DNA of 64,000 nucleotides from Lytechinus pictus (Eukaryota). The notes beneath the pieces are model-generated. The model had not been told where the DNA came from. It did no database searches and worked only from the letters and a program-made list of their open reading frames with translations. Both the position numbers and the translations under genes were made by a program. Shown piece after piece: positions 3,182-64,000 of this stretch. Every line of letters starts with the position of its first letter. The stretch's first letter is position 1. The stretch is taken from contig NC_087262.1 of the NCBI RefSeq assembly GCF_037042905.1, forward strand, positions 6,944,001-7,008,000, written 5' to 3'.

Positions 3182-6070
3182 TATTAAGCCAGGCATTACT
3201 ATATTGATTGATTGATTGATTTTATTTCTCATGATAAAAAACAATACAAAATATATACATTCAAAGAATAAAAAGTTAATAATTGAATTACATAGTGAAT
3301 AGGTATATGAATTCGAGATTATAAAACTTATAAGAGAAATATGGGAAAAACCAAAGAGCTACAAGGTGCTTGAAGGGGGTTATTCCCAGTTGAAGAATAT
3401 GATTGCGGAAATCTTTTATATGCATAAATTGATAAAATAACATACAAATAAAGCATAAATAAACTTAACTGTATTTAACTTGCCCAAGAGAAATCCTAAA
3501 CACCCGCCCCCCCTTACATGAACAAAATTTACCTTCCGACTAATATGTAGCTAAAATTTGATTTTTTAATTTCCTTTTGAATGCCGATAAAAATGAGTAT
3601 TGCTTGATCTCACTGGGAAGTGAGTGCCAGACATCGGGACCCCGTTGTCTTATTGATTTTATAGATGTTAACAAAGTTCGCAGATTTATTAAATGGTAAT
3701 TTTCCGAGCCTCATATTGTCATCATGACAAAAATAGGAACGTAACTGATGATGATTATAGGAGCCAGGAAAAGAAAAATAATGGGGTCTCGGGCTAATTT
3801 GCTCCAAAATGCCCCAAAGAGCTATGGGAACTAAAAAGAGGACCCTTCAATTTCCTATAGAGTCCAGTGTAAACCTATACAATGAAGCAAATTCTAGCTG
3901 GTGAGCTGTTGAATATGGCAGAGCTCCCAGAAAGTTTGTAACGATTAATTTTCACCTGATGACTGCAGCAAAGAAGATGAAGATGCTGGTGGTAACATTA
4001 ATGACGATGACATACATGTATACCACAGCAACATCAATAAAGATGATAAAAATGGTAACGATTAACATGCAATATTTTATACACGTATGTAATAACACCT
4101 GTGAACATTTTAATCAAAATAAAATACAACATTGCATGCTTATTTTTTGAATACCGGTATGCAGATACATGTAGAACTGTATTCATTTTGGTGATTCCCC
4201 TTTGAATGTTTACTGAACCCTACATGTAACAATGTAGGTAAAAATACTTGGTGATGATAATATTAATATGGTTAAGATAAAAATGAAAAAAAAAATATTT
4301 GACATAACGCATTTGTCTTTATATCTACTTCGATATGAAGTGAATAAGATTTTACCTTGATGTATCGCATTTTAATGTTAATCCATGATTCATGACCTTC
4401 AAACCCATTAACCTACATGTACATGTAGTAGGGAAAGATTGTAGAGCGGTTTACGTGTCAATATCTTTAGTAAGCTGCCTGGGAGCACTTCCATATGTCG
4501 AAGTTCTAATACCCAATTCGTCACCTGCAATAACATTTCATTGAAATGAAATTACACATAATCAATTTCACTTTGAAGAATGAAGTTGTGCATGTATGCA
4601 TACAGTATCCTCTGCGGCTTTTGTACATTGTAGGCCTACATGTATAGTATGGTATCACAATTATTGAGACAATCTATATACAATGTAGCTTGCTCTCATT
4701 TGAATTATTTTGTTATCTTGGCCCCTGAAGCTTGCGCTTGGAGGCCTACATATTTTGCGTGCAATTGAAAGTACAAGCAGCATACTATACAATATGTGGA
4801 TACTGCTATAAAGTGCATTGCGCAAGGGTGTTTCAGTGAAAGTGTTTTGCTATTAAAGAGGACACTGACAATGCTGCTCTTCAGATCACACAGCATTAAA
4901 AAGATAATTCCCTTGCAAGGTCTGACTGAATCTCAGTGGTTCAATGATTCCGAAAGCAGTTAGTCTTTACAAGCTTGGGCTGTTCAATGCAATATCCATA
5001 CAATCACACAAAAGCAATAGAGTCTGGTCAAGTGGGGAACTCTTGTTTGTCCAGAACCAATAGTGTACATTACTATAGTTATGCAAATACATTTGCTGTG
5101 TCCAAGTAATGTACATGTAAAAGATACACACGTCTGTTGTAAACCATTAAACCACAGAAGTTTATTTCTATTTGTACTGTACCTCCATGGTTCTGTGACA
5201 TTACACTGATAATGTGACTTGAAGCCAATTGCTAATTGCTGTAATAAAATTTCCATGAAAACTGTTTTTTGTTGATGACTTGTACAATCACTCAAACAGG
5301 ACAAAAAGGAGAAAAGAATTATGCATTTTGCAAAATAAAACTTCTATGCAGGGAATAATTTTGCTTTTATACAAATATGAATAGCACTTTTGGTCATAAG
5401 AGAAAAGCTCTCAACTAGTAATTTACAGTCCCACATGTATGTAAAAATATGCTATACAAGAGACTTTATGCGTAGCAGTCTTCCAAAAATGTGGAGCAAA
5501 TTGCGATGCGATACCAGGAAAATTATGTACATAAACTTTTGTAGAGAATGGAACCTGTAGATTATAAAGTTACTGTATTCATTTATGTCACAGACCTAAC
5601 TATTATTCAGTAATAATTTGTTATGTGATTCATAAAATTCTCTGCAACACTGACACCACAATATATCCTGCCTACAATGACAAGAAAATCATACATCTCT
5701 ATGTGCATGTTCAGAAAACTTCAAAATGAATAGTAGAGATTTGTTTAATGCCTCTAGTACCTCTACACTCCATCGACCAATCTACTGTACATGTACATAT
5801 ATTACTACAGTTTAGTTGTCGTACAATGCATGCATGCTGATCTCTAATGACCTCCTTCAGACTATTTATTTTGAGAGATAACCAGAGTTAATGACATTTA
5901 GTATTAACTAGCTTTCAACTAAAAAGTAAGTGTATAACCCTCTTACCAATTGAGCAAAGTCCTCTTCCTTTGTCGATCTGTACATTGGAACAACATGAAA
6001 TATCCTGTTAATGATTTGGAAGCTGAATTATTTTGATGGCAATGCAGGGGAAATTGTGATGGTACAACCC

Positions 6071-6579
6071 TACTATTACTGCTAAAACTTACAATGCTAT
6101 TGCTACTGCTGATGCGACTACTTCCACCACTACTACTACTACTTCTTCTTTGTCGTTGTCATCGTCTTCTTCTTTCTTCTTCTTCGTCATCATCGCTGTC
6201 ATCTTTTCTTCTTCTTCATCCTCCTCCTTCTTTCTTCATCTTCTTTATCTTCTTGTTTTTTTTCTTCTTGCTCTTCTTTTCCTCTTCTTTTTCTTCCTCT
6301 TCCTCCTCTTCCTCTCCCTCTTCCTCTCATTCTTCCTCTTCTCCTCTTTCTCTTCTTGTTTTTCTTCTTCTTGTTCTTCTTTTCCTCCTCTTTTTCTTCC
6401 TCTCCCTTCTCCTCTTCCTTCTCCTCCTCTTTCTCTTCTCCTCTTTCTCTTCTCCCTCTTCCTCTTCTTTATCCTCCTCCTTCTCTCTCTCCTTGTCCTC
6501 CCCCTTCTCCTCGTCCTCCTCCTTTTCCGCCGCCTCCTCCCCCTCTTCAAGTCTTCTTCAGTCTTCTCCTCCTCCCTCT
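6071..6579. repeat. Compound (CTA)n/(CTT)n/(CCT)n low-complexity tract
   Basis: Directly visible. It is the source of the poly-S/L/F pseudo-ORFs. Confidence 0.95.
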
Positions 6580-7429
6580 TAAAAGATTTTTGTTCTACTA
6601 CTTTGTATGATAAAGTGACAATGTACATTGTAAATTTACAGGAAATTTAGCTTGCGATACACCTACACGTAAGGTTTGAGAACATCCCTTCGTCCCTCAC
6701 TCTTGATAGAAAAATAGATATCACGATGCATGTACATGCAATCGCTCTGCATGGAAGATTGCAGAAAGTACAATATGGGCTGCAATGTCAGAACTGACCT
6801 TATTGAATTCATTTTTAGCGAGCGAGAGGCACGACTCGCGGTAATACTGGAAAGTAGATCAATAAAAAGCCGCAGAGAGTACATACAATCTAATGTGGTA
6901 AAAGAATGAGGAGACGGGGAAGGGATGACAGAGCCGAGATGTAATCGGAGAAGGTGCATAATTGTGCAGAAAGCATTGCTGTATTTCCTTTTATGATACA
7001 AATCGTACAACATGAACATGTAGGTCTACATGTATATTCCCAAGCATGAGCAAAGAATTTGCTGCATGTTATTGGCACTAGATGATAAAAATTGTTAAAG
7101 AACATTCAAATACTCCGAAATGAACAAGACAAAGTCTGTAGCAAATGCTTTTTCAAGTCGGGAGCAATGATTTGCAATACAAATTTTTTTTTTTAGTTCT
7201 GACTCTGAGATTGAATTTATCTTTTAAAACAACAGTCCTTCCAACTGTGGAAATGGAATAAATATCTAAGTCGAAAAACAAATGTTATGAAGAGATTTTT
7301 TCTGTCTCTTCCCTCCCCTAATATCTTTAACCCCATTTCTCCCTGCACTCTCCCTCACATACTTTTCAAAAGGTAGACTGATTGTAATAGGAACATTTAT
7401 TCTGTATATCCCATCTCATTCCCTCTTTA

Positions 7430-7828
7430 GGCGGTGCTGCACCAGCCCGATTTCGCTCAATCTCGAGATTTTAGCCCGATCGGCCCTCTTCGCGATTAAT
7501 CTCGAGATTCAAGAAACCCCGTCTCCACCATCGCAAGAAGAGCGATTCCTGCTTGAGCGAGGCATCGAAGCATTATGGTCTGACGCCGTGATTAAATAAT
7601 CCTGAGTGCGTCTGCACCTGCGAATTAGCGGGATAATCGGTAAAATAGCGCTCTATTTTGCAGAAAATCCCAAGTTGACTTGGGATTGCAATCTTGAGAT
7701 TAATCCAGCGAACCAGCGCGATAATTGCATCTCCATTACAAATAATCTCGAGATTATTCAGATCGGGATGATTTGCCGGATCAGAAATAGCGCGCTAATT
7801 TGAAAACTGGGGCTGGTGCAGACACGGC
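7430..7828. mobile_element. GC-rich MITE
   Basis: Ends …CTGCACCAGCCC / GGGCTGGTGCAG…, with repeated internal AATCTCGAGATT palindromes. Confidence 0.75.
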
Positions 7829-8681
7829 ACTGATGTCTCTTCTATCCCACCTCTCTCTCCCATACTCCCTCTAAAGAGCTCCACCTCCTCTTCCTTGTTC
7901 TTGTTCCTTTTCTTTCTCTATTTCTTTACCCCTCTCATCTTTGTCCCTCTCTCTTGCTTCATACTATACTCTGTTCTCATCTCATTCGTCTTTCTCCTTT
8001 TCTCTTCTCCTTTCCAGTCTCTTTCTACCACCCTTCCTCCTCAATTTCTTTCTTTCACACATGTTTGGTGCTTTCAGACCGACTAAAAAACTGATAAAAA
8101 ACAGTGACGCTCATGGTGCTAGCGCAGCAACAGTTCCTTTGGATATACTGTAAATATTTTATATATTTTATACATAAAAACAACTGCAAAAATAGAGATG
8201 TATTTAAAATGAAATTGACAAAGATATCTTAGATTACTACAAGTACATATTTGCATCACCCACTGGAATTCCTAGCTACATCCTGGTGGGGCCTGGTTCC
8301 CTTGTGCTTGCTGCTCTGTTCACCAACAATTTAAGGGGCAAGCCGGTCAGCTCAGAACTGACAGGAGCTCTAGCAAATGAAAGGGCACCAACCCCCATAG
8401 AAGCTAGTTAGACCAGTGAGTGATGACAAAAGAGTGTACTTGTATACAAAACAAATATTATTTCTTAAAAAAAGAAGAAAATCATCAATAATCATAGAAA
8501 ATTTGTCTGGGACTGATTGCATTGACTACAATGTACAATCAATCTTCTAAAAATCAAGCGTACCATTTATCATTTATCTTTGTATTATAAGACCCTGAAC
8601 AAGCTCTCATAATTTTTATTTTACGGGTATTATGGTGATCAGGTTGGTTTGAAAGCGTCTAATGTGCTTCCAGAGTTGTTG

Positions 8682-11706: not shown

Positions 11707-12640
11707 TGTACATGTACTTACTGATTATTTTTGAAAAATTTGGAATGATAATAGTACACTAAAATATTGTTGATGTTTGTTTTGTTTTTAGTCATTATGT
11801 GTTTACTATACACACAAAACATTGTCAATTGTAATAATGCCAAGTATACAGATGTGCTCAAAAGTAAAAGTGAACTCCACAAGAAAGAGCACTCCATGCT
11901 GAGTGTTAAAGTATCCAGCAACATTAAAATGTTCAGCAAGTCCAGAGAACAAACTTTATTGAATTTAGTATTTTGTAACTTGACTTCTCAAATCACAACA
12001 TCTCAAACATGGCAGAACTTGAACACTTTAAATTTGTTCATTTTCTGGTGGGGATCACTAATCACTATCTTTGAGCACCCATTGTGAAAATATAAACAAT
12101 GTACAATGAAATTGTATTTGTTGATTGATGTTTAAAATAACTGTACATGTACATGTAGGGCTATAATGTTCAGTTTTATAGGCTTATAAATATGTTGATT
12201 TTTTTTCTCAATTTGTGAACAAATCTCATGTTTGAATTTTGTTTTCCACATTTTAGATAATATTTTTGAATCTAAACTCAGTAAAATGTACATGTAATGG
12301 TTACAAATATGTATTGTATTTTTTTATTATTATTGGATTTCGGTTCAGTGAAATGTAAAGACCAATAAATACCTCTTACTTTGTGCAAGTTCATAGAAAT
12401 TCTTATATTTTGCTCAAGCTGTACTCATTATCAATGATAGTTCATTAATATCTTATGACATTTGTGTGTATTGAATATAATCCGTTGATTTTGAGTTGAC
12501 AATATTAAAGTCCTTGCCAATATAAATATGTATCGTGCATGGTTATTCGATCATCATACCACATATTTACATCAATTATGATTTCAATGTTGCTAAACCT
12601 GATTTATTTTTATCCCCTTCTTCCCCCTTAATTACATCAG

Positions 12641-12702
12641 CTGGTCGTTCATTTTACCCTTAGTATGGGTTCCCTTATCTGCTATATACTTGACACAACC
12701 AA
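12641..12702 (+). CDS. KCNMA1: BK channel (Slo1/KCNMA1-like) internal exon encoding S1, variant A (LVVHFTLSMGSLICYILDTT+AA)
   Basis: Polypyrimidine tract and CAG acceptor (…ccccttcttcccccttaattacatcag|), 62 nt, GTAAGT donor at 12703. Phase 0 in, phase 2 out. Aligns without gaps to the recalled vertebrate Slo1 S1 [21 protein letters not shown], also a 62-nt exon. Splices in frame to 59429 (AA+A = K, then PIERC). Confidence 0.88.
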
Positions 12703-15071
12703 GTAAGTACCAACACGTTGCTTTCACACCGTTGCATTTTTTCTGTTCACCCTTGCTTTCATATAGCGGTACATATATAGCTACATGTAGAAAAGCAAGT
12801 TTATGCATTGGTTTGTATACATGCCCTGTTCACACTTGCACAGTCTGTTCACCTCCAAAAAATATCTGTTCGTACCAATAGCTTTAGATTTGGTGCATTT
12901 GATTTTTCAGGAATGGCTCGCTGGGAATAAAAGAATGGAAGATATTCAAAGACCTTTCATTTGAATTGAAGCGAGTGAACAGACCTTTATTTAGAGAAAA
13001 ACGATTGTGTGAAGAGCCACTGTTTACATTATGGTGTGAACAGTGGTAACGTATTACAAACTCATGATGAAGCTGAGCCCGAGAATGTTGCTTGGATTAG
13101 TATAAGCATGGACCTACTACAGTAGTACATGTAGGTCCATGGTATACATGTAAGTAGCAAGAACTTGCATTTCATATTTGGTCTGTCTCAAGGCATTTTA
13201 ATTAAAACTAATTTGAAAAAAAGTTAGAGAAAACAAAATAAAAAAGCATGGTCATTTTAATAATACCGTTTTTTAAATTATTCTGTTTAAAAGGAAAAAC
13301 ACAGACTCCATATGGGCAGAGTGGAAACACCATGAATTCAGGGAAATTCTTGAATTTGTGAATTTGAGAGCCACCATTTGAAAGATAGGAATAATTCAGC
13401 AGCCTTGATGCAGGCTAGCACAGAACTACATATGTAGCAATGAGCATAATTCCTGTACTGAAGATGAATTTTGCATTGTTTTGCTACATTATAAATGCTT
13501 TATGCATGTTTTTGAACGCTGCATTTTTGTTCATAGCACTTTAAAAAAAATGCATGATGCTTTTAATATGCAATCTTCAACTTGAGTTTTATTGTTTGTA
13601 ACATGTTTTAAACTTTCATGAGCAAGTTGAGCCTTTGCTCAGTCTGGTCCAAGTGTACATTTACAGTGTTGATATATATTTTTTGGTAGCATACGTGTGT
13701 AATGCTACACAGAATTTATTAACATTATAATACATGAAGCCATCTTCTATTATTATTATCTTCAAGTTTGTTTGTTAATTAAACCTCATTCTTATTTCAT
13801 TTGTATCATTACAATATTCAAGTTCACTTCATTATATTTTTATACCACTGTATATATATTCTCTTGGTCAATGAATAACTCTAGGAGTATTATGAACATA
13901 ATTGATTCTGGTTGTTATATATATACTTCATGGTTGATTAATAAAATGTTACTTCTGTCATTATGTTTCTTGTTATACATGTATTTTTCTCTTAATAGGG
14001 AGGCTTTACAGTATATCTAGAGAAGCTTACATTTAATTAATCATGTTATTTCTAATAAAAGCACATCACGTCTGGGTTCATTATTCTGTTTTAAAAATGT
14101 TATATTTACACATGGTCAACGTGTTTCTTTTCTGCTTGTATTGAGAGAAAGTCTATTGACCTGCAGTCATAAATTCAGTTTGTTCATCAATTGAGTGTCA
14201 AATAGTCCTATGTTTTCACTTTATGAAATGAATTTTTCAGATAAGATCTTCATTTCCATTGTGATGTATTTTACAATGTACCGTTTTTTTTCTGTAAGAA
14301 TTTAACGTGTAAGTTTAATAAACAACGCTTCTGGTCGTTGTGAACCAAAAATTGAATATTTGGTGCATACATTGTACATGTAAAGTGAGGGTGTGAAGGT
14401 ATTATATAGGGTTTTGATTATTAAATTCAGTTGAATATACATGTATGATTGTTGTATTATTCTACAATGTAAAGTTCTTTGATTTGATGATGTATCTTTA
14501 TTACTCATAAAAAAGAAGTGTATAAAATCATTCATATATATGTTTGTACTTTGTTTTATAAGCACCAATATGCAGTGTCTTCCAAGATGAGGTACACACC
14601 GTTTTGTTCAGTCATCATACATTCCACAGAATGGATAAATGATAAAATGTTCAGCTTGTAATATGCACTACAAAAATCATTCAAGAACATTTCATGATCA
14701 TGTATGTACAGTATACCATGCTTTGTTATCAAGGTCCTATTTAATGAAACTTGTTTAATATCTTCCATAACTTGATAAAGCAAATTTAACAGTCAAATCT
14801 AACAAGTTTTATTAAAAAGGGTCATGAAATTGATAATGCCAGGTTGTCTCATATACATTATGTGCATAAAACCTCTCATAACATGTATGTACAATATTAA
14901 TGTTTATCCTACATGTAATGTTAACCAATTTATTACAGTTGACAAATACATGTATGAAAATGAAAACAGGATTGTTGGATGTTTTTATGGTTAAACATGT
15001 TATAACAGCAGTACATGTAGATAAATACTATCATTGTATAATTGCACATTCAATTTTCTTAACGTCAAGTA

Positions 15072-15353
15072 TCATTGCAATGCCATTCATTTCCATCTTT
15101 TATCCCCCGCTCGTTTTTTTTCCATCCTCCAAACTACACCATCAACCGTACGCTATTACAGGTGATTTTGGTATTCACTGTAAGCTTGGGCTCGTTCGTC
15201 ATTTACATTCTTCAGCTTAACGAGTAAGTGTCTCGCGATGTCGAGAGATTGGAGTGCCCTAACGCCTTCATCAGAGTGTTGTGTCATTCATTTCTTTTTC
15301 TTCATTTAATTTCTTTTTAATCCATTCATTTCGACATGGTTCCATTGCTTCAT
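15072..15353 (+). promoter_or_regulatory. YCAY clusters flanking S1 exon B (candidate Nova/Pasilla-type splicing elements)
   Basis: 6 YCAY in 15072-15142 and 8 YCAY in 15268-15353. Confidence 0.5.
15162..15223 (+). CDS. KCNMA1: BK channel (Slo1/KCNMA1-like) internal exon encoding S1, variant B (VILVFTVSLGSFVIYILQLN+GA)
   Basis: TACAG acceptor, 62 nt, GTAAGT donor at 15224. Same phases as variant A. Matches the Slo1 S1 pattern V.LVF..S.G..VIY. Splices in frame to 59429 (GA+A = E, then PIERC). Confidence 0.9.
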
Positions 15354-17551
15354 CTTTCTGTGTGCACAATAGGTGTCTTATCAAAACAGAGTGAGATTAA
15401 ATGGTACATAAATGGTACATCTTACACTATGTTCATAGTGTAAGATGCTATTACATACATGTTGATAACGGAATAATTTTGCTTCAAATTTTTCATGAAA
15501 AACAAAATTCCAATGCACTTAGTTGACAAATATATATTAGCATTAGAAAGAAGTGATGTGAAAATAAATAAGTGAATAAATAAAAAAAAAAATATATGTT
15601 CAAATGGCCTTTTTCACTTTTTCAAAAGAAAATTTACTCATTCTTGAATTCTCAATTTGGTTGACTTTTACTACAATTAAAGAGATATAAACAGCACACA
15701 CTGTCGGGATAATGCCAATTTCCAATTTCACATGTATTTGCTTGACAATTTCAACATAGCAATGTACAGTATGTTCTTTTAAAGATTTAATTAGTATACT
15801 AGCTTTTAAATGCATAATTTATTGAAGAGATTGTTCGAGAAAAATTACATAAAAGGTATATCAGGTTAAAGGATTTGTAGACTTTTGTGTGGGGAAAATT
15901 AATATTTTCCGGGGGGGGGGGGGCTATTTTTTGTACTTTGCTAAAACACTCTTTATATTAAACTCAGTAGCAATTTGTTGGGCTCTTTTCCAATAAATGA
16001 GGGCTATGATAATTTTTTTTTTTTTTTTTTTTTTTTTTGGGGGGGGGGCGTGCCAATACTAACCGACATGCATCTTGCCTGCTTGTGTGAGTTAACAACA
16101 GTAGTTGTTTTTAGAGATTGCCATGATTTATATGTATGCGTTTCAGAAAGATGAAGCAGAAGGAACGAATGATTCATTTCATATTCATTCATTGTTACAG
16201 TGATGTCACCTCCATTTGATCATTTGTTCATCGAATGATCATTGTAATATACTGAGAATGAATGCTTTAGTATTAAAGTGACCAATATACATTTATGTAT
16301 ACATAATGGGCTGTATTTGCTTTTAATTTGCAATTATTCTTTTATTACAGACCTCTTTTATAATTTGAAAACAGTTTTTACATTTAATTTCAAATTTGAT
16401 TTTAAAATTTGCTTTTCCCACATAAAACTCCCAATATTATTTTCTAAATTTATGTATTGACCTACTGTAAATGTATTCATTTGAAATGTGAAAGCTAATT
16501 TTGATGTATACAACTGAAAAAAAATAATGGCAATCAACACTTCCACATTGAACATGAAATTTAGTATATTAGATACATGTACATCCAGGTAATTTGTCAA
16601 TTTTGTGTAATTAATGATTTATATTAGAATCATAATAGAGATAGGTACATGAATTTCATTGAGACATTTGAAGAGAGTGGTCTTGTAGTTCAGTTACTAG
16701 TATTCAGCACATTTCTTTTTCAGTTGAAAGTGAAAAAGGGATGAAGTAGGATTTTTTTTTTAATTAAAAATTGATGGATCTTAAGTGCTGAAAACAGAGA
16801 AGAAGTCACGAATGGCAGGGGAACTCCAAAATGTTGAGTATCAACATGATGTCAAATGCACTTTATTTCCTTCCTATAATTGAATGATTTAATTATTTTA
16901 TTACCCCCAGCTTGAGTGGCACATGAATAAATTTAAGTTGAATTAATGGAATTCACAATCAACAGGAGCAACAGATATTTCAGCTAAAAGCATGGAAGAT
17001 TGAATTAAAAATTTTCGTTTGAATTATGCACTTTCTTTATAATGGTTTATGCCTCCTTGAAACATCACATAACAAATTATTTTAGATAAGACTCCCTGTT
17101 CCATGCAGTTCATATATCAGCACAGCTCAGACAGCTGAAATGTAAAGCCTTTGTTAAGCAGTCAATATTCTTGTCAGAAATGGAACGCTTTACCTTTATT
17201 TAGTTTGTAGAACTAGGACACTGTCTAATAAAAAAGATAATATTTCCATTAATATACACATAAATCTTTACCCTTGTTCATACAGGTGGCATGTATCACA
17301 CTTATATGTATTTCCAGACCTTGTTCATTAGCCGTAGGATTGAAATATTTCAAAGGGTAAATTGACTCCAGGATATTTTAGGTAGCGAAAGCTTTCACAA
17401 AATGTTTGAGGAGATATAAGGTACACTTCATTTTAATGTTGTGTCAACCCTGGGGAAATTGTATTTTCCAAGTGTCATAATCCATATCAGTTACCCTTTA
17501 AAAGCAAATAACAAGAAACAAGATTAATAACAAAAGTATTTTTTAAGTATA

Positions 17552-27513: not shown

Positions 27514-29124
27514 TAATATATGTACATGCAATGAGCCCAGTTATTTTTTCTGATCGGGTGGTTGTGAAAGGACCTTCTGCTAGTTATTAAATGACTCATG
27601 AAGTACTTAAAACCCGGATTAATCATAAACCATCTTCTGTAGCATCCCGACTGCATCTGCGGGGGAAGAAGATTCAATCTTATTTCATGAACTCCTAATC
27701 TCGGTAAATGGTCCCATTTGTCAAACTAATGAACCACTACAATCTTGGCCGGTAATTCTTAAATGCTGTTAAAGTATCTTCAGTTGAGAGCTAAAAGGAC
27801 AATGATGGTATATTTTCACATTAAATCAAAGCCCTTTTATCATTCGGCAGGCGATATTTTGAAGCAACTCTCTAGAAAATCTCTAATGAACCAAGGTACA
27901 ATATGGCCTGGCATTCTTCAATGCTTTTATATCATATCCAGTTGAAAACTAGTAGGACAGTAACGATGTATTACCACATTGATTGACTGCACTTTTATTA
28001 TTCAGAAAGTGATATTCTGAAATAATTCTCTAGATTAAAAAAATGTATATTTTAAGTCTCTATTGATTTTCAAGATTCTCTATTCTTGGCAGATGCCATG
28101 CTCTTGGTTGGAACCAAGCTATAGGTTTAATTATTAATCAGGAGGTGAAGGAGGACGGGGGGTCAGACGTCGATCTCCTCTTGGAAGTCGGCCCAACCAT
28201 CAAGTCCCCCGAAATAGCAGGTAGATGATTAATAGGGACCTGTGTTTCTCGATGCGTGGGTTGGGCTGGAGGTACATGTACATGAAAGACGATGCGGGAA
28301 TCTCACGGCGTGAGCAGCTCTCCATCACAATACATGAAAGGAAATGAACGAATGTATGAGGATGCTACGTGGGGTGGGACTAGTCTGCATGCACAGACTC
28401 AAATTGACACTTTAACCAATTATGCCATGTCTATAGAGTGAAGACTAGATTTGAAGCTCCATCCATGTCCGTGTCAAATAGTTAATTTACATCTAGTCTC
28501 ATTACTTCAGACTCTGCATTATGCATCATGCAGATTGCAAAAACCAAAGGTCTGTGCCTGCAGACTAGGTCTGCACTAGGGTACACTGCATTTCGATGGG
28601 GTGTTGGGTGGGGGAGCAATATGATGGATAGGTGACGTCATTATTTTTCTTCATCTGAATAATAATGGTATTCTTATTTAAAGTTAAACGACTCAAACCT
28701 CTCTTTGTCGTGCTCTTTTTTTCTCTTCACTGCTTGAAAAATATTAAGAGCCGGTCACCCCCCTGCCCCCTCTCTCCTGCGGCAACGCCCTTTGAGTGGT
28801 GTGCTATACCACTAGGCAAATTCTCAAGGAACAAGGTATTAATCATAATTGAAGAGGTTTCACAATGAATATGCAATTAAAAAAAGAAGAGTAGTGATTA
28901 CTGTGAAAAAAAAAAGTGTTTATTTCATAAATTTGCTAATTTTTTTATGTAGGTGGGGGGAGGGGGGGGGGGGGGGGGTAGAGGAGAGCGGGACGTGCAT
29001 CCTATGGGAAAACTCAAATGTTTTTTAGCAACATGTGGGGGAGTGCGTCATCCCCTTGCCATTCCAAGAAATTTCCATTTTGTCAAATTTTCCTTGAATG
29101 TACTTCTGGAAAGTCTTACCGGTA

Positions 29125-43244: not shown

Positions 43245-44094
43245 ACATATTCTGTTGTAGTGGTACTCTACATGTAACGGCAATGCATATTTGGTATTGG
43301 ACTTTGGTCTGCGCTTGTTTTCAGTGAAAAAGTGCCGGGCCAAGACAGCGTTCAGAGCTGGGCCAAATGCGCGGTCAATTGTGGTATGGCATTTGGCCTT
43401 TTTTTTTTTCGGCTCAGCCCGGCTTCACTTTAATCGGGCTTTAGCTTTTTTTGAGTACGAACAAGTTTCACTTGCATTTCTTCATCGTAGGAAAAAGGGA
43501 AGGAAAAGGTTCTTTTTCCTTTTCCTGAATGTAATAGTACCAAGCATTTATTGATTTCAATTGCTTCCGGATTTGAATAGGATGGTAAATAGTCGAGGCA
43601 AAAGGGATTGTGAAACTCCTATACATGAATATTAATTGTGTAGAAGTATTAACTGTAGTCCCACATGTAGAGAATATTATATCCTTTTCTTATTATTTTG
43701 TTGAACATTAAACCTAGTATAGATACATGAGGTACAAATACATAAATACACTGTAAAAACTGGTGTTAAGTACCACACCTATGTTGCAAGAAAGTTTGAA
43801 CTTAAAATTTAATGATATTAAAGAATTACAAGCAGAATGGGTGAATAAAGTAAATTGTATGAGAAGTATATGTATTTTTTAGAGTCATAACCTTAAAATG
43901 ACCCTGAGGCAGCAGTCTGAGAAAAAAAGGCAAAATTGTCAATCACCTGTTTTTGCTGGAGCATTGTAAAGGAGTAGTTTCTAATTGATAGCTTTTCTGA
44001 AAAGTCTTAATAATTGATGAAGCAGAGTTGTAGCTGATTAATTACCAAGGTGATCCGTAAATAGCATATTGCGATGCTCTCCTTTCAATAGACA

Positions 44095-44650
44095 GAGGGA
44101 AGGGGTGAGAGATTGCAATTAGTAAGGGAGGGAGAGAGATGGAAGGAGGGTGATGGAGGGAGGGAGGGAGGGAGGAAGGGAGAGGAGAGGGAAAAGAGGG
44201 GAGAGGAGAGGAAAAAGGGGAGATGAGGAGGGGGAAGAGGAGAAAGGAGGAGGGGGAAGAGGGGAGAGGAGGGGGAAGAGGGGAGAGGAGGGGGGGGGGA
44301 GAGGAGGGGGGGGGGAAAGGAGGGGGGGGGGGGGGAAGGAGGGGGGGGGGAAGAAGGGGAGAGTGGAATTAGAGGAATTGAAGGGGAGAGACAGAGGGAG
44401 GGCAATGGAGGGAGGGAGGGGGAGAGAAGGGGATAGGAGAGACAGGGTGAGGGCAATGGAGATAGAGAGGGGGATGGGAGAGGGAAGGGGGAGCTCCACG
44501 AGAGAGTGAGGTGTGAGGAGGAGGGGGAGAACAAGGGTGGGAGAAAGGTAAAGAAGGTGAGTAGAGAAAAAGAGAGAAAGAGATGGAATGAGAGCAAGTA
44601 AGAAAGAGACTAGAATAAGAGCAAACAAAAAGGAAGAGAGGAAAAGGTGT
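44095..44650. repeat. G/A-rich polypurine tract
   Basis: Directly visible, with many G-runs. Confidence 0.95.
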
Positions 44651-45965
44651 AGTAAAGAAATCAACATCTAATGAGAATATTTTACAAAATGCATTTTGAA
44701 AGGAGTTTAATAGTTTTACAATAACAATTTAAATCAGTTGTGCGATTTTACTAGTCTTGGAAAAAATTAATATTTTTTTTCCAGGGCTACTTTTGAGCTC
44801 ACCAGCTCAAATATCCCAATTTGTATCAAAGTTAACATTGGACCCAATATGAATTTCAGGGGCCCTATTTTTAGTTTTCGAGGGTTCTTTAGGGCATTTC
44901 GGGGGCGAATTCGATCCGAGCCCCCTTGTAATTTTTTCCCTGGTCTCTCTCTCTCTCTATTAATCTCTCTATTCTGTATTCTATTTAAATGTAAGTATTG
45001 ATTTAATTTTGAATATTATGATGGCAGTGTACATGTACTGTATGCTTCACCAAAAAAAGGGAAAGATGACGGTTTTTCAAATTGAACATTTTTTCAAGCT
45101 GACCCAGTTGCAATGATGGTGACATTGCAGGCTGATAAATTGATTAAATGTTGTAGATGGTCGACCGAGTTTAAATTTATTGAAAGACTCCAATCAAATT
45201 GCATATCACGTGAATCGATGTATTCCATGGTAACAGGAAACCATCGATTCTAACACCTCCCTGCCTGCTGCATGAAAGCCAAAGCTCAAAGCAACGACAT
45301 CATATCAGAGATTGAAAATTCATCGCTTCTAATATGATGTTACTCATAATGTCTTGTGCAGTGTGATTATGAAATCTCAAATTTTCTAAGGTCTCCAAAA
45401 TAAAATCATGAAATTTTAAAAACTACTACATGTATATGCATTTCATCTTTTGTTTTTGCAAGACAATTCATGGTATGGTTGCAAGAATGCCTTTATCACT
45501 GCATAAATGTTGATGCAAGTTGTCTTTTTCACCACATATTCCCCCATTTTTTCTGATGCCCATGATCAATAAATTTGAGGATAAATTTGCATAATTCAAG
45601 CAGTTATTCAAGCAAATGAAGTAGAAGTATTGTATCGAATTATACAGATTTCTTTTAGTGAAGTCTTCTATTCATCCTCGCAGTACATGCACACATGTAA
45701 ATGGAAACAATCCACAAAATAGCTTGAGCCTTTGTTCAGCGCTTTTCATTTCTGTCCAAGAAAAAAATATATGACCTGGAACTAAAACCCATGCTGTTGA
45801 TCTGTTCAGAACTCTCTCCCGGCTTGTGCGATAGATGTTCCTGCAGTTGTGAATGAGTCGTTTTGGCATAGTAATCACCTAATTAATTAGAGAGAATCAA
45901 ATGATATTGGCTGGAGAATGCGCAAGCTTCATAGAACTCAAGTTTGTCTTGAAATTGGACGCTTA

Positions 45966-57679: not shown

Positions 57680-59428
57680 TGTATATTTCCCAGAGGTGTA
57701 ATTTTTTCTAGCAGTTTAAGAGTACATGTATATCTTAGAGATTTATCGAGTGTCTTTTGACATTGATGGCAGCTGACCGAAAGTGGCTGTCCAGTTTTCA
57801 TTTCATCTTATTTTAAATAAGTTCATCCTTCAATCGCAATATCAAGTTGATTTAGCTCTGAACACAGAATTTCCTGTCTTCATAATGGACAATTTCTATT
57901 TTTATTTTGAATTGTAACTTATTTCAGTGGCGGATTGAGGGGGGGGGGGTGTGGGCAAGTTATGCACCTCCCTTTATATTTTAAAATCATCCATTAATAA
58001 TGATAAATCCTGGATACACCTCTGATATTCTATTGTTTTTCCGAATTTATGAGGATATTACCCAGAACTGCTTTCCACATATATATTGCCTTTCTTACAT
58101 CCAATGTAGTTAGTAGTATGCTGGTTTCTTTCATATTATTTTTTTTGCATGAATATTGAATGCTTGCATTGATAACTTGGCATTATTTAGCATTGCATGT
58201 ATTTTTACCTTTACTACTAATCTTCACACTTTTGATTATTTAGATATATTTCAATATTTGTTGTTTCATTAATCACATATCTAAACGTCACCCTTATATT
58301 AGGCATGCTTATATAATTTATATTCCATTTATTGTCTGTTTTTCTTTGTTGTAATGCTGTGACTTTTCACATAACTTGCATCTTTATAACATGAATAATA
58401 AACACTTGTTTTGATGTGATTTCAAGATCCCTTAAAAAAAACCCTCATGCTGTGTCGTGTCTACCATAATAATAACTGTAATATGTAATCCATCTCCAAA
58501 CCAGGAGATGTTACTCCAATAGATAGAGATACAAATAAGCATGTTCCCTTCTGCAGCTTTTAGCAAAGATATCCTTGGCAAAAATTGATGTGTGTTCTTT
58601 CATTTACATACAGTGTAATTTACCCAGGTGCCAAATTTTAAATCTTGAAATAATTTGGGGGATTTTTCAATCATATCCTAACACTGGCATAAATCCTTGT
58701 CACACCTTTTGTCCAGGGGAGGGGGGTGGGGATGATCTATTGTTCCATCCCCCTAGCTGAACAATATGTGTGATGCAATGATTTACTCCAGTGATATCTA
58801 TTAAAACAGGCCATGACTGCCTTAAATAACTCTTCCAAAATTCAAAAATTATTTTTCATGCTTTGATCTCATCTTGATATCAATTGAGATGTTGTATACA
58901 CTATGATGTACAACCCAGTAGAGATACATACATGTATGAACTTCATAGTTATTGATGTTTAATAAGCTGCTAAAGTGCTTTTTAGGATACATCATTAACA
59001 AGGTATGCTTCATCATTACTTTTATTACTTTATCCTATGTCAGGATAGGATGGAGACCTTTTAGTTTGAACTTTTGCATGTGAGTGTTGCAAGTATCTAG
59101 GCACCAACTCATAAAGTTGCAATTTCAAAGCATCTAAAACCTGATTTGAAAATACTTATCCAGTTTAAAATTGATGTTCTCGTATTGGTATATATATATA
59201 TTTTTCTATAAGAGATTGTGCTAATAATGGAGCGTTAAGAAATACCTCCCCCCCAAAAAAAAACATTTTCTTAAACTTAGTATTATCAAAGACTCAAATT
59301 ATTTTTTAACCCTGAAAATTCTATCAGTAAATTGTGTTTATCATTTATTCACTTTAGTTATACTTGTTTTGCTTTGAAAATAATAAGGATAGTTTGTCTA
59401 AAACTTGTCTTTGAATTTTTTTCTTCAG

Positions 59429-59522
59429 ACCAATAGAAAGATGCTTCAGTATAGCAGAGGATCATATCTTCCAGGTGGACCTTGCCTTCAATATATTCTT
59501 TCTCCTGTACTTTATTCTGAGG
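59429..59522 (+). CDS. KCNMA1: BK channel (Slo1/KCNMA1-like) exon encoding the S1-S2 loop and S2 (PIERCFSIAEDHIFQVDLAFNIFFLLYFILR)
   Basis: ttttttcttcag| acceptor, 94 nt, AGG|GTAAGT donor. Phase 2 in, phase 0 out. 18/31 identical to recalled human [31 protein letters not shown], keeping the C141, D147, Q151, D153 and R167 equivalents (mSlo1 numbering). Confidence 0.96.
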
Positions 59523-59549: not shown

Positions 59550-60216
59550 TTGATGATGGTGATAGTGGTGCTGGTGGTTGAGGTGATGATGACAATGGTG
59601 GTGATGGTATTGATGAAGATGATGGGCGGTGATCGTGGTGGTGGTGGTATTAATGAAGACGGTGATGATATGATGATGATGGCGGCGGTGGTGGTGGTAA
59701 TGATGATGGTGGTGATGATGATGATGGTGGTGATATTGATGAAGATGATGATGATGGTGGTGTTGGTATTGATGATGACGGTGATGAGATGATGATGATG
59801 GCGGTGATAGTGGTGGTGATGATGGTGGTGATATCGATGAAAATGATGATGATGGTGGTGGTGGTGGCAGTTGAGGTAATGAAAATGATGATGGTTGTGA
59901 TGNNNNNNNNNNNNNNNNNNNNNNNNNNNNNNNNNNNNNNNNNNNNNNNNNNNNNNNNNNNNNNNNNNNNNNNNNNNNNNNNNNNNNNNNNNNNNNNNNN
60001 NNNNNNNNNNNNNNNNNNNNNNNNNNNNNNNNNNNNNNCGATGATGGTTATGATGGTGGTATTGATGAAGATGACGATGATGATGATGATTGTGCTGATG
60101 GTGGTGGTGGTGGTTATGATGATGGTGCCTGATGGTGTTGGTGGTGATGGTGGTAAAAATAATGATGATAATGACAGGTGATGATTGTGGTGGTGGTGGT
60201 GATGATGATAATGATG
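59550..60216. repeat. (GAT/GGT)n compound microsatellite containing a 136-N assembly gap (59903-60038)
   Basis: Directly visible. Confidence 0.95.
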
Positions 60217-62951: not shown

Positions 62952-64000
62952 ATTGACTGTAGACCGACAAAAAAGGCTATTGCGTCATTACCAATGATAG
63001 ACCATTGGTCCGGTTGGAGTCAGTTTTATCGGTGTGACTGTTACCATTATTGCCTGAATTCATCTCCTGAAAGCAAAAAGGGCTTTAATAAAGTCATATT
63101 CATTAGCACTCATATACCTCTCTAGCTAAAAGATAGTGCCATCCAAAGAGCAAAAAAGATCTTTGAGTCTTATCATATTGAAGTTAGTCCGTGCATAGTC
63201 TGGATCCAAGAGACAATCAATTTTCTTGAGAGCTAGAAGGGCTTTAAGACCTATCTGATGATACAGTCTAGAGTTATTACTTGGCTGTATCACTTTGTCT
63301 ATTCAGAGTTAAATGACACTACGTCAACTATCATTTTACTTTACTTGGGACCTACTTGCTATATGGGGACAATCACATCCCTTAGAGCTAGAAGGGTTTT
63401 ATTATTCAACTCAGATTCAATGTCCTGCTGGCTCTAAAGGAAATACCATTCTGAGAATCATTAAAGTTGCAGGAAGAGCTTTCTTTAAAGGCCAACTCTG
63501 TCTATATGCCAAATTCAATCGTTAAAGTGAAAATTAAAACGCATCAAACAGTAAAATAATAAAAGAAGAACCAGGAGAAAACAAACTATAGCACTTGTTT
63601 GCATTATTTTGCTTTACTTGCAAAAGAGTGAGCTGTGATATTACAATAGATATTTCTTGTATTATATGAAATCTACTTGTGTAAATTTAAAAAATAATTT
63701 TTGTGCACATGTACTCTAATTTTTACGGTGTCACTTGGCTCATAATTGCAATAACAGCGAGTCAACTCTATTCCGGTTACAATTCAGAACCTTCGGAATA
63801 AATGCCAGAAATGTTTGGATTAACACACCCTTTTTCACTTTGGTCTGAAGAACATATTTAATCTGTAATGAACCTTCAGAAAAAAAATCTATACCCATAA
63901 AGACATTCATTTTCCATGCTGTATATGTACATATAGGACAATAAGGTCCTTCTGGCTGTTGAGAGTTGAGACATAGTACCTGGGCATTATCCTTAGAGTG

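What the first reader, a model, noticed from the sequence alone, without database searches (positions are those of the whole stretch)
12701..15165. Built-in frame lock: including both exons makes an immediate stop, skipping both shifts the frame
Exon A ends in AA and exon B begins GTGA, so an A-to-B splice reads AAG TGA, a stop in the first full codon of B. Because 62 is not a multiple of 3, skipping both exons also destroys the frame. The 2.46-kb spacer rules out steric hindrance, and both exons have ordinary U2-type sites. Exclusivity is therefore inferred to rely on NMD plus trans-acting or RNA-structure control.
Basis: partly seen in the sequence, partly recalled or inferred. Interest (0 to 1): 0.7.

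Follow-up and report, generated by a model that had tools for sequence, protein, structure and literature searches.

The report
Either-or BK channel exons, frame-enforced
Two tandem 62-base exons of a BK (Slo1) potassium-channel gene are used one or the other in mRNA, and using both or neither breaks the reading frame; this is real, but it is the ordinary consequence of duplicating an exon whose length is not a multiple of three.

Summary
Exon A (12641-12702) and exon B (15162-15223) are homologous 62-nt exons encoding alternative S1 helices of a Slo1/BK channel.

- **Gene model.** The upstream exon lies 20.5 kb upstream, outside the window, and ends on a full codon. The downstream exon (59429-59522) needs two preceding bases.
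- **Frame arithmetic.** A+B reads AAG TGA, a stop at codon 131. Skipping both shifts the frame, with the first stop at codon 234 in exon 6.
- **RNA evidence.** Reads from three libraries, plus contigs of a fourth run, show exon1→A, exon1→B, A→exon3 and B→exon3. No A→B joint was listed among about 70 spliced reads. The A share ran 66%, 46% and 30%.

The "frame lock" is not a special device. Any duplicated 3n+2 exon has it, and an early stop after a shift is expected by chance. NMD policing of non-3n exclusive exons is established (C. elegans, PMC4165533). NMD was not tested here, and I found no specific RNA docking structure.

Verdict: a new instance of a known kind, of low interest. Sibling notes of this scan (s1-317471, s1-317597) cover the same exon pair.

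The parts
12641..12702 (+). Exon A, 62 nt. It encodes S1 variant LVVHFTLSMGSLICYILDTT plus AA, which forms codon AAA (K) with the first base of exon 3.
   Evidence: Sequence and translation. RNA loose ends at 12640 match the end of exon 1, and those at 12702 match the start of exon 3, in X18-X20. X22 has a 121-nt contig over the exon.
12703..15161 (+). Intron between A and B, 2459 nt, GTAAGT...CAG, U2-type. No RNA depth was seen over it.
   Evidence: The last AG upstream of B's acceptor ends at 15069, giving an AG-free zone of 92 nt.
15162..15223 (+). Exon B, 62 nt. It encodes S1 variant VILVFTVSLGSFVIYILQLN plus GA, which forms codon GAA (E) with the first base of exon 3. After exon A, its bases 2-4 (TGA) fall in frame.
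   Evidence: RNA loose ends at 15161 (exon 1) and 15223 (exon 3) appear in all runs.
12701..12702 (+). The last two bases of exon A (AA). With G of exon B they make AAG, followed by TGA (15163-15165).
59429..59522 (+). Exon 3, 94 nt: one base completing the split codon, then PIERCFSIAEDHIFQVDLAFNIFFLLYFILR (S1-S2 loop and S2). It is the common downstream exon for both A and B.
   Evidence: It matches BK channel chains only, at human residues 137-167, E 1.8e-5. Its first 30 bases are the loose-end consensus behind both A and B.
12608..12617 (+). TTTTATCCCC in the pyrimidine tract 33 nt upstream of exon A. It is one of only two copies in the window.
   Evidence: 2 matches, 0.25 expected, and 4 of 100 shuffles reach 2.
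15098..15107 (+). TTTTATCCCC 64 nt upstream of exon B, the second copy. It is preceded by a block (15063-15082) homologous to 12572-12591. This is either a remnant of the duplicated unit or a shared cis element.

Best explanation
A and B are tandem-duplicated, mutually exclusive exons that each supply the 21-residue S1 helix segment of a Slo1/BK channel alpha subunit. Each exon is 3n+2 long, the upstream exon ends in phase 0, and the downstream exon starts in phase 2. Only transcripts with exactly one of the two exons keep the frame. A+B terminates at the junction (TGA, codon 131, 58 nt before the next exon junction and far from the 3' end). Skipping both terminates at codon 234 in exon 6. Both would be typical substrates of nonsense-mediated decay. 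I judge that the choice between A and B is made at splicing by regulated, probably trans-acting, control, because the A:B ratio differs between samples. NMD would act only as a backstop that removes the occasional double-inclusion or double-skip product. The frame rule is a by-product of duplicating a non-3n exon, not an evolved lock. Shown: the exons, their phases, the stops, and single-inclusion mRNAs in four runs. Inferred: NMD clearance, and that splicing itself is coordinated.
For: - Exon anatomy and the stops.
- Exon 1 aligns to BK residues 18-115 and exon 3 to residues 137-167. The gap is 21 residues, exactly what one 62-nt exon supplies.
- Exon 6 carries the TVGYGD pore and matches BK at E 1.4e-23. 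BK_channel_a exons lie downstream on the same strand.
- RNA: in X18, X19 and X20 every laid read (24, 24 and 23) is spliced. Loose ends before A and before B equal the end of exon 1. Loose ends behind A and behind B equal the start of exon 3.
- No joint A to B was listed, and no alternative splice site was seen. X22 holds two 121-nt contigs that differ only in the exon (depth 40 and 32).
- There were 24 A-donor and 26 B-acceptor reads. If none joins A to B, the A-to-B fraction is under about 11-12%.
- The A share is 66%, 46% and 30% in the three libraries (chi-square p 0.047), which fits a regulated choice.
- The genome encodes UPF1.
- In C. elegans, 19 of 29 exclusive clusters are non-3n, and in 14 of those the aberrant forms rise in an NMD mutant (PMC4165533).
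Against: - NMD was not tested in any way.
- Read numbers are small, and the tool lists a joint only from 3 reads per run, so one or two A-to-B reads per run could be hidden.
- The exon1-to-exon3 skip junction could not be assayed, because those exons lie 20 and 44 kb away and only one 6-kb lay was allowed.
- Steady-state absence of A+B fits either efficient NMD or a strict splicing choice, so it does not separate the two.
- The differences in A:B ratio rest on about 20 reads per library of unknown tissue.
Confidence: 0.7

Rival explanations
1. NMD is the main enforcer. The two exons are recognised largely independently, many primary transcripts carry both or neither, and decay hides them.
For: Both exons have strong, similar sites: all donors are GTAAGT and both have good pyrimidine tracts. 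No structural device was found that would prevent A's donor from using B's acceptor. The stop in A+B is placed ideally for NMD. UPF1 is present.
Against: With A and B near 50:50, as in X19, independent choice would make at least half of all transcripts out of frame. NMD rarely removes substrates completely, yet no A-to-B joint reached 3 reads among about 20 informative reads per library. This would also be a costly arrangement for a gene of more than 160 kb.
Confidence: 0.12
2. Exclusivity is set by competing RNA structures (a docking site and two selectors), as in Dscam exon 6, 14-3-3 xi or ATE1. The duplicated upstream element (TTTTATCCCC with its flank) would act as the two selectors, and a purine-rich tract as the docking site.
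For: TTTTATCCCC occurs only twice in 64 kb, just upstream of each exon, and the upstream flanks keep residual homology. This is what the duplication model of PMC6071210 requires. 12604-12623 can pair over 20 bp, 9 of them G-U, with 58716-58735, which lies 700 nt upstream of exon 3. The score was 37 against a shuffle maximum of 31.
Against: The partners are low-complexity G/A-rich tracts (28950-28999, 44100-44500, 58716-58735, G13 at 15911-15923). They pair equally well with the downstream flanks and with any pyrimidine tract. Duplex energies between flanks are within shuffle range, z from -1.2 to +1.6, for the 8 of 15 pairs scored. No conservation test was possible. The shared motif may simply be a duplication remnant inside two polypyrimidine tracts.
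Confidence: 0.08
3. The frame property is irrelevant in practice. Splicing is strictly either-or through trans-acting factors, for example repressors on the pyrimidine tracts. Out-of-frame forms are essentially never made, so NMD has nothing to police.
For: No double-inclusion joints and no aberrant sites were seen in any run. The A:B ratio depends on the sample. In C. elegans, 5 of 19 non-3n clusters showed no NMD dependence.
Against: Splicing is rarely error-free. Most tested non-3n clusters do show NMD-sensitive by-products. The depth here is too low to detect forms at the per-cent level.
Confidence: 0.1

Closest known systems
Non-3n homologous mutually exclusive exon clusters policed by NMD in C. 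elegans (Kuroyanagi et al. 2014, PMC4165533)
   Same: These are tandem homologous exons of equal length that is not a multiple of three. Double inclusion or skipping shifts the frame and creates a premature stop. The introns are too long for steric block, and no U12 introns are involved.
   Different: In C. elegans, NMD dependence was measured in a smg-2 mutant. Here it is only inferred. The gene, the animal and the protein segment (the S1 helix of a BK channel) are different.
Tandem duplicated exon events in KCNMA1, Drosophila slowpoke and C. elegans slo-1 (Martinez-Gomez et al. 2022, PMC9741552; Lagrutta et al. 1994 as cited there)
   Same: It is the same gene family, which repeatedly evolves homologous either-or exons that tune channel properties.
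   Different: That paper maps its events on the cytosolic gating-ring structure 3naf. The present pair swaps the S1 transmembrane helix of the voltage-sensor domain. I found no paper in the held library that describes an S1 exon pair.
FGFR2 IIIb/IIIc and similar vertebrate non-3n exon pairs, where out-of-frame double inclusion or skipping is removed by NMD (my own knowledge, not checked here)
   Same: A frame-based safety net is added to regulated splice choice.
   Different: In FGFR2 the regulators (ESRP, PTB, Fox) are known. Here none is identified.
Alpha-tropomyosin exons 2/3 and OGDH exons 4a/4b: steric or distant-branch-point exclusion (PMC7969005 for OGDH)
   Same: It is a two-exon either-or choice.
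   Different: Those cases need a branch point close to the upstream donor. Here the intron is 2459 nt and the AG-free zone before exon B is only 92 nt, so this mechanism is excluded.
Docking-site/selector RNA competition (Dscam exon 6, 14-3-3 xi, ATE1; PMC6071210, PMC7797038)
   Same: A duplicated intronic element lies upstream of each variant exon, and a possible complementary tract lies elsewhere in the flanking intron.
   Different: No specific, above-chance or conserved docking site was found. The only candidates are purine-rich simple sequence.

Membership tests
Slo1/BK (KCNMA1-type) channel alpha-subunit gene | An extra N-terminal S0 helix and an S0-S1 linker ahead of the voltage-sensor domain | tested here: met
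   Exon 1 (109 aa, YWYVFLSSSLITFFGGLLGILAV...) matches only BK chains. It aligns to residues 12-102 of the Aplysia channel at E 3.3e-11 and to residues 18-115 of the human channel at E 1.1e-7.
Slo1/BK (KCNMA1-type) channel alpha-subunit gene | A K+ pore with the TVGYGD signature in a BK-like S5-P-S6 region | tested here: met
   Exon 6, VENSGDPW...TMSTVGYGDVYAKT..., matches human BK residues 256-312 at E 1.4e-23.
Slo1/BK (KCNMA1-type) channel alpha-subunit gene | A cytosolic tail with the BK_channel_a domain (PF03493) | tested here: met
   Two exon hits over the cut-off lie on the same contig and strand, 136 and 159 kb from the window start: C18:7080180 and C18:7102808. The Ca bowl and full RCK domains were not examined.
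Tandem-duplicated mutually exclusive exon pair | Adjacent homologous exons of equal length and phase | tested here: met
   Both are 62 nt and start in phase 0. They share 31 of 62 identical bases and 8 of 17 identical residues in the tblastn alignment. No third copy was found in 244 kb.
Tandem-duplicated mutually exclusive exon pair | mRNAs contain one or the other exon, not both | tested here: met
   All four single-inclusion junctions are seen in three RNA libraries and in one contig set. No A-to-B joint was listed. Limits: about 70 reads, and a listing threshold of 3 reads per run.
Tandem-duplicated mutually exclusive exon pair | mRNAs do not skip both exons | not testable with these tools
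   Exon 1 and exon 3 lie 20.5 and 44 kb from the pair.
NMD-policed non-3n exclusive exons | Exon length is not a multiple of three, so double inclusion or skipping gives a premature stop upstream of later exon junctions | tested here: met
   62 = 3n+2. A+B stops at codon 131, and the skipped form stops at codon 234 in exon 6. Many exons follow.
NMD-policed non-3n exclusive exons | The aberrant isoforms accumulate when NMD is disabled | not testable with these tools
   This needs an experiment. The only evidence here is the presence of a UPF1 gene.
Steric-hindrance exclusive exons | The donor-to-branch-point distance in the intervening intron is too short for a spliceosome (under about 60 nt) | tested here: not met
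   The intron is 2459 nt, and the last AG upstream of B's acceptor is 92 nt away, so the branch point lies near exon B.
U2/U12 spliceosome-incompatibility exclusive exons | One flanking intron has U12-type signals (an RTATCCTT donor) | tested here: not met
   The donors of exon 1, A, B and exon 3 are all GTAAGT, and all acceptors are YAG with pyrimidine tracts.
Docking-site/selector RNA competition | One docking sequence is complementary to a selector next to each variant exon, above chance and conserved | tested here: inconclusive
   A shared upstream element exists, but its only partners are nonspecific purine-rich tracts. Conservation could not be tested.

The most novel reading that the evidence does not exclude
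The duplicated intronic element upstream of both exons (TTTTATCCCC with its flank) would act as a pair of selector sequences. They would compete for a purine-rich docking tract in the 44-kb downstream intron. That would make the two S1 exons exclusive from the moment of duplication and allow tissue-specific swapping of a voltage-sensor helix in a BK channel. NMD would be only a silent backstop. This would be an S1-helix exclusive exon pair in a deuterostome Slo1 gene with an RNA-structure mechanism, and I found no paper describing such a case in the held library.
Probability: 0.07. Interest if true: 0.55.

Novelty: new member of a known kind. Interest (0 to 1): 0.25.

Why it matters
The frame rule explains why only single-inclusion mRNAs can make a channel. 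It also predicts which by-products should appear when NMD is blocked, so it is a useful annotation and a simple experimental handle. It adds no new principle. Non-3n exclusive exons with NMD-sensitive by-products are well documented, and the property follows from the length of the ancestral exon. The more interesting biology is covered by sibling notes of this scan: a BK channel here can swap its whole S1 voltage-sensor helix, and the two forms are used in different proportions in different samples.

Tried and rejected
1. **Exons A and B against PDB.** Searching the 20-aa exon peptides alone found nothing, because they are too short. The gene identity rests on exons 1, 3 and 6 instead.
2. **Representative-library search.** The 31-aa exon 3 returned only one mis-predicted 131-aa fragment, P0001. 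It was of no use for full-length relatives.
3. **Homologue search with exon 1.** This gave three genomic exon-1 ORFs from relatives, at 90, 72 and 50% identity. They confirm that the exon end (GK[CF]L|gt) is conserved. The length window of that tool prevents reaching full-length annotated BK proteins from single exons.
4. **First regex hunt for the upstream exon.** A search with DWAG-type motifs failed because this linker reads REYSASLISAQT. A looser search found exon 1 at -8247..-7921.
5. **Third S1 exon copy.** None was found in 244 kb. A 9-aa match at 63716-63742 (E 0.19) has no splice sites, lies after exon 3 and has only about 52% base identity to exon B (counted by hand). I rejected it as chance.
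6. **RNA structure.** One duplex script timed out. Flank-to-flank duplexes are within shuffle range (8 of 15 pairs). The longest stems are low-complexity sequence. A sliding docking-site scan returns only G/A-rich simple repeats.
7. **Splicing-factor motifs.** Rbfox-type (U)GCAUG and PTB-type motifs are not enriched around the exons.
8. **Close paralogue.** I looked for one to date the duplication. Exon 4 matches only itself, and the second BK_channel_a locus on C15 is too distant.
9. **Literature.** Searches found no description of an S1 exon pair in any BK gene.

Full report
**What is at the coordinates**

On the + strand there are two 62-nt exons with canonical sites.
- Exon A is 12641-12702 (...ttacatcag|CTGGTC...ACCAA|gtaagt).
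- Exon B is 15162-15223 (...ctattacag|GTGATT...AACGA|gtaagt).
- The intron between them is 2459 nt.

In the same frame they encode LVVHFTLSMGSLICYILDTT and VILVFTVSLGSFVIYILQLN. These are clearly paralogous hydrophobic segments, with 31 of 62 bases identical. Joined A to B, the sequence reads ...ACC AAG TGA.

**Which gene, and what fixes the frame**

- The next exon downstream is 59429-59522. It matches only BK chains in the PDB, at human residues 137-167 (S1-S2 loop and S2), E 1.8e-5.
- The upstream exon is not in the window. I fetched 100 kb upstream and found it at window -8247..-7921 (L011:1753-2079). It runs from an ATG through an S0 helix and linker to ...ISAQTKSGKCL|gtaagt.
- That exon matches only BK chains, at human residues 18-115. 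Three relatives keep the same exon end.
- Exons 4, 5 and 6 follow at 66003-66114, 75488-75639 and 78740-78910. Exon 6 carries TVGYGD and matches BK at E 1.4e-23.
- BK_channel_a exons lie further downstream on the same strand.

BK homology therefore leaves a gap of exactly 21 residues (116-136) between exon 1 and exon 3. One 62-nt exon fills it. Exon 1 ends in phase 0, and exon 3 starts with the third base of a split codon.

**The frame arithmetic**

- Exon1-A-3-4-5-6 and exon1-B-3-4-5-6 are both open through the pore.
- Exon1-A-B-3 stops at codon 131. The TGA sits at bases 2-4 of B, 58 nt before the B/exon-3 junction.
- Exon1-3 (both skipped) is shifted. It stays open through exons 3, 4 and 5, and the first stop is a TGA at codon 234, bases 15-17 of exon 6.

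Both claims of the finding hold. The detail to add is that the skipped form has a late stop, not an early one.

**RNA evidence**

Three stranded, rRNA-depleted RNA libraries of the same species label (X18-X20, about 6% of each read) and the contigs of a fourth run (X22) were laid on 12300-15600.
- Depth is confined to the two exons, and all 24, 24 and 23 laid reads are spliced.
- The loose ends before 12640 and before 15161 have the same consensus, which is the last 30 bases of exon 1.
- The loose ends behind 12702 and behind 15223 have the same consensus, which is the first 30 bases of exon 3.

So exon1→A, exon1→B, A→exon3 and B→exon3 all exist, at exactly the predicted sites. No exon lies between B and exon 3.
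- No A→B joint, no shifted site and no intron retention was listed.
- X22 holds two 121-nt contigs that differ only in the exon, at depths 40 and 32.
- There were 24 A-donor reads and 26 B-acceptor reads. An A→B fraction above about 11-12% is unlikely. However, the tool lists joints only from 3 reads per run.
- The A share is 66%, 46% and 30% in the three libraries (chi-square p 0.047). This suggests a regulated choice, on small numbers.
- The first mates all lie on the - strand, as expected for a + strand RNA in a standard stranded library.

Neither is met.

Both exclusions are correct.
- *Steric hindrance.* It needs a branch point within a few tens of bases of A's donor. The intron is 2459 nt, and the AG-free zones ahead of the acceptors are 130 nt (A) and 92 nt (B). 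The branch points therefore sit near the acceptors, and even the distant-branch-point variant described for OGDH (PMC7969005) does not apply.
- *U2/U12 incompatibility.* All four relevant donors are GTAAGT, and none resembles a U12 donor.

NMD was not, and cannot be, tested with these tools. The genome has a UPF1 gene, and both aberrant forms have stops far upstream of many exon junctions, so they are plausible substrates.

The principle is well known. In C. elegans, 19 of 29 validated exclusive clusters are non-3n, and in 14 of those the double-inclusion or skipped forms rise in an NMD mutant (PMC4165533).

The "lock" is also not evidence of design.
- Any duplicate of a 3n+2 exon has this property.
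- With this exon composition, a stop in the first two shifted codons has a chance of about 10%, and some stop within the 21 shifted codons about 67%.
- The TGA arises simply from a GTG (Val) codon followed by an A-initial codon.

**RNA structure**

I found no specific docking/selector arrangement.
- Inverted repeats around the pair are low-identity or built from the ACATGT-type simple sequence common here.
- Flank-to-flank duplex energies are within the shuffle range (8 of 15 pairs done).
- The longest stems are homopolymer-like.
- A sliding scan for a site that pairs with both upstream flanks returns only G/A-rich simple tracts (28950-28999, 44100-44500). These pair just as well with the downstream flanks.

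One lead remains. TTTTATCCCC occurs only twice in the window, 33 nt upstream of A and 64 nt upstream of B. The upstream flanks also keep a second homologous block. The duplicated unit therefore included upstream intron, as the model of PMC6071210 requires, and 12604-12623 can pair (20 bp, 9 of them G-U) with 58716-58735. Without orthologous loci this cannot be told apart from a duplication remnant inside two pyrimidine tracts.

Rbfox-type and PTB-type motifs are not enriched.

**Comparison with what is known**

BK genes of human, fly and worm each carry their own tandem-exon events. The events discussed in PMC9741552 are mapped on the cytosolic gating ring. I found no paper in the held library on an S1 exon pair in any BK gene. 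The library is partial, and genome annotations may already list both isoforms.

Other notes of this scan name the genome as the sea urchin Lytechinus pictus. I did not verify this. They report many other tandem exclusive exon sets in the same genome, so this case is one of a common class there.

**Verdict**

The exclusions and the arithmetic are right. The NMD role is plausible but untested. There is no support for structure control. The "built-in lock" is a by-product of exon length.
- Best reading (0.7): regulated splice choice, with NMD as a backstop.
- Novelty: a new member of a known kind. Interest: low, 0.25.

The N stretch at 59903-60038 lies in the intron after exon 3 and was left untouched.

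Noticed in passing
window 12608-12617 and 15098-15107 (also 12572-12591 versus 15063-15082): The 10-mer TTTTATCCCC occurs only twice in the 64-kb window, once just upstream of each S1 exon. A second homologous block precedes it. This is either a remnant of the duplicated unit or a shared cis element in both pyrimidine tracts.
   Followed up: partly
window 15418-15447: A perfect 13-bp hairpin (CATCTTACACTAT / gttc / ATAGTGTAAGATG) lies about 195 nt downstream of exon B's donor. It sits next to a short direct repeat (aatggtaca twice). I saw it by eye. It lies inside the stretch of a sibling note (s1-317655).
   Followed up: no
window 12633-12743 and 15075-15296 (RNA depth): The share of exon A against exon B differs between three RNA libraries (66%, 46%, 30%; chi-square p 0.047). 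This suggests sample- or tissue-specific choice of the S1 helix. The tissues are not known to me.
   Followed up: partly
window 44050-44730, 28950-28999, 15911-15923, 16030-16048, 58716-58735 and 59245-59263: Long purine-rich or G-run simple tracts lie in the 44-kb intron. One pair, T9G10 and its complement (16030-16048 / 59245-59263, 19 bp), sits near the two ends of that intron and could bring them together. This is low-complexity sequence, barely above the shuffle maximum (46 against 42).
   Followed up: partly
window 6000-6650 and 7800-8150: Strongly pyrimidine-rich simple sequence on the + strand (GC skew -0.27 in 6001-8000) lies in intron 1 of the BK gene.
   Followed up: no
G000:C15:4024333-4032825 (- strand): A second locus has BK_channel_a (PF03493) exons. 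Its S2-S3 exon does not match that of this gene, so it is probably a distant Slo-family paralogue.
   Followed up: partly
window 12650-12652 (His codon) in exon A: The exon A version of S1 has a histidine and a cysteine inside the hydrophobic helix (LVVHFTLSMGSLICY), where exon B has Val and Ile. This could matter for function. It is the subject of sibling note s1-317597.
   Followed up: no
window 63716-63742: A 9-residue match (LIFTVSLGS) to exon B lies in the intron after exon 3. It has no splice sites and about 52% base identity. I judged it a chance match (E 0.19).
   Followed up: yes
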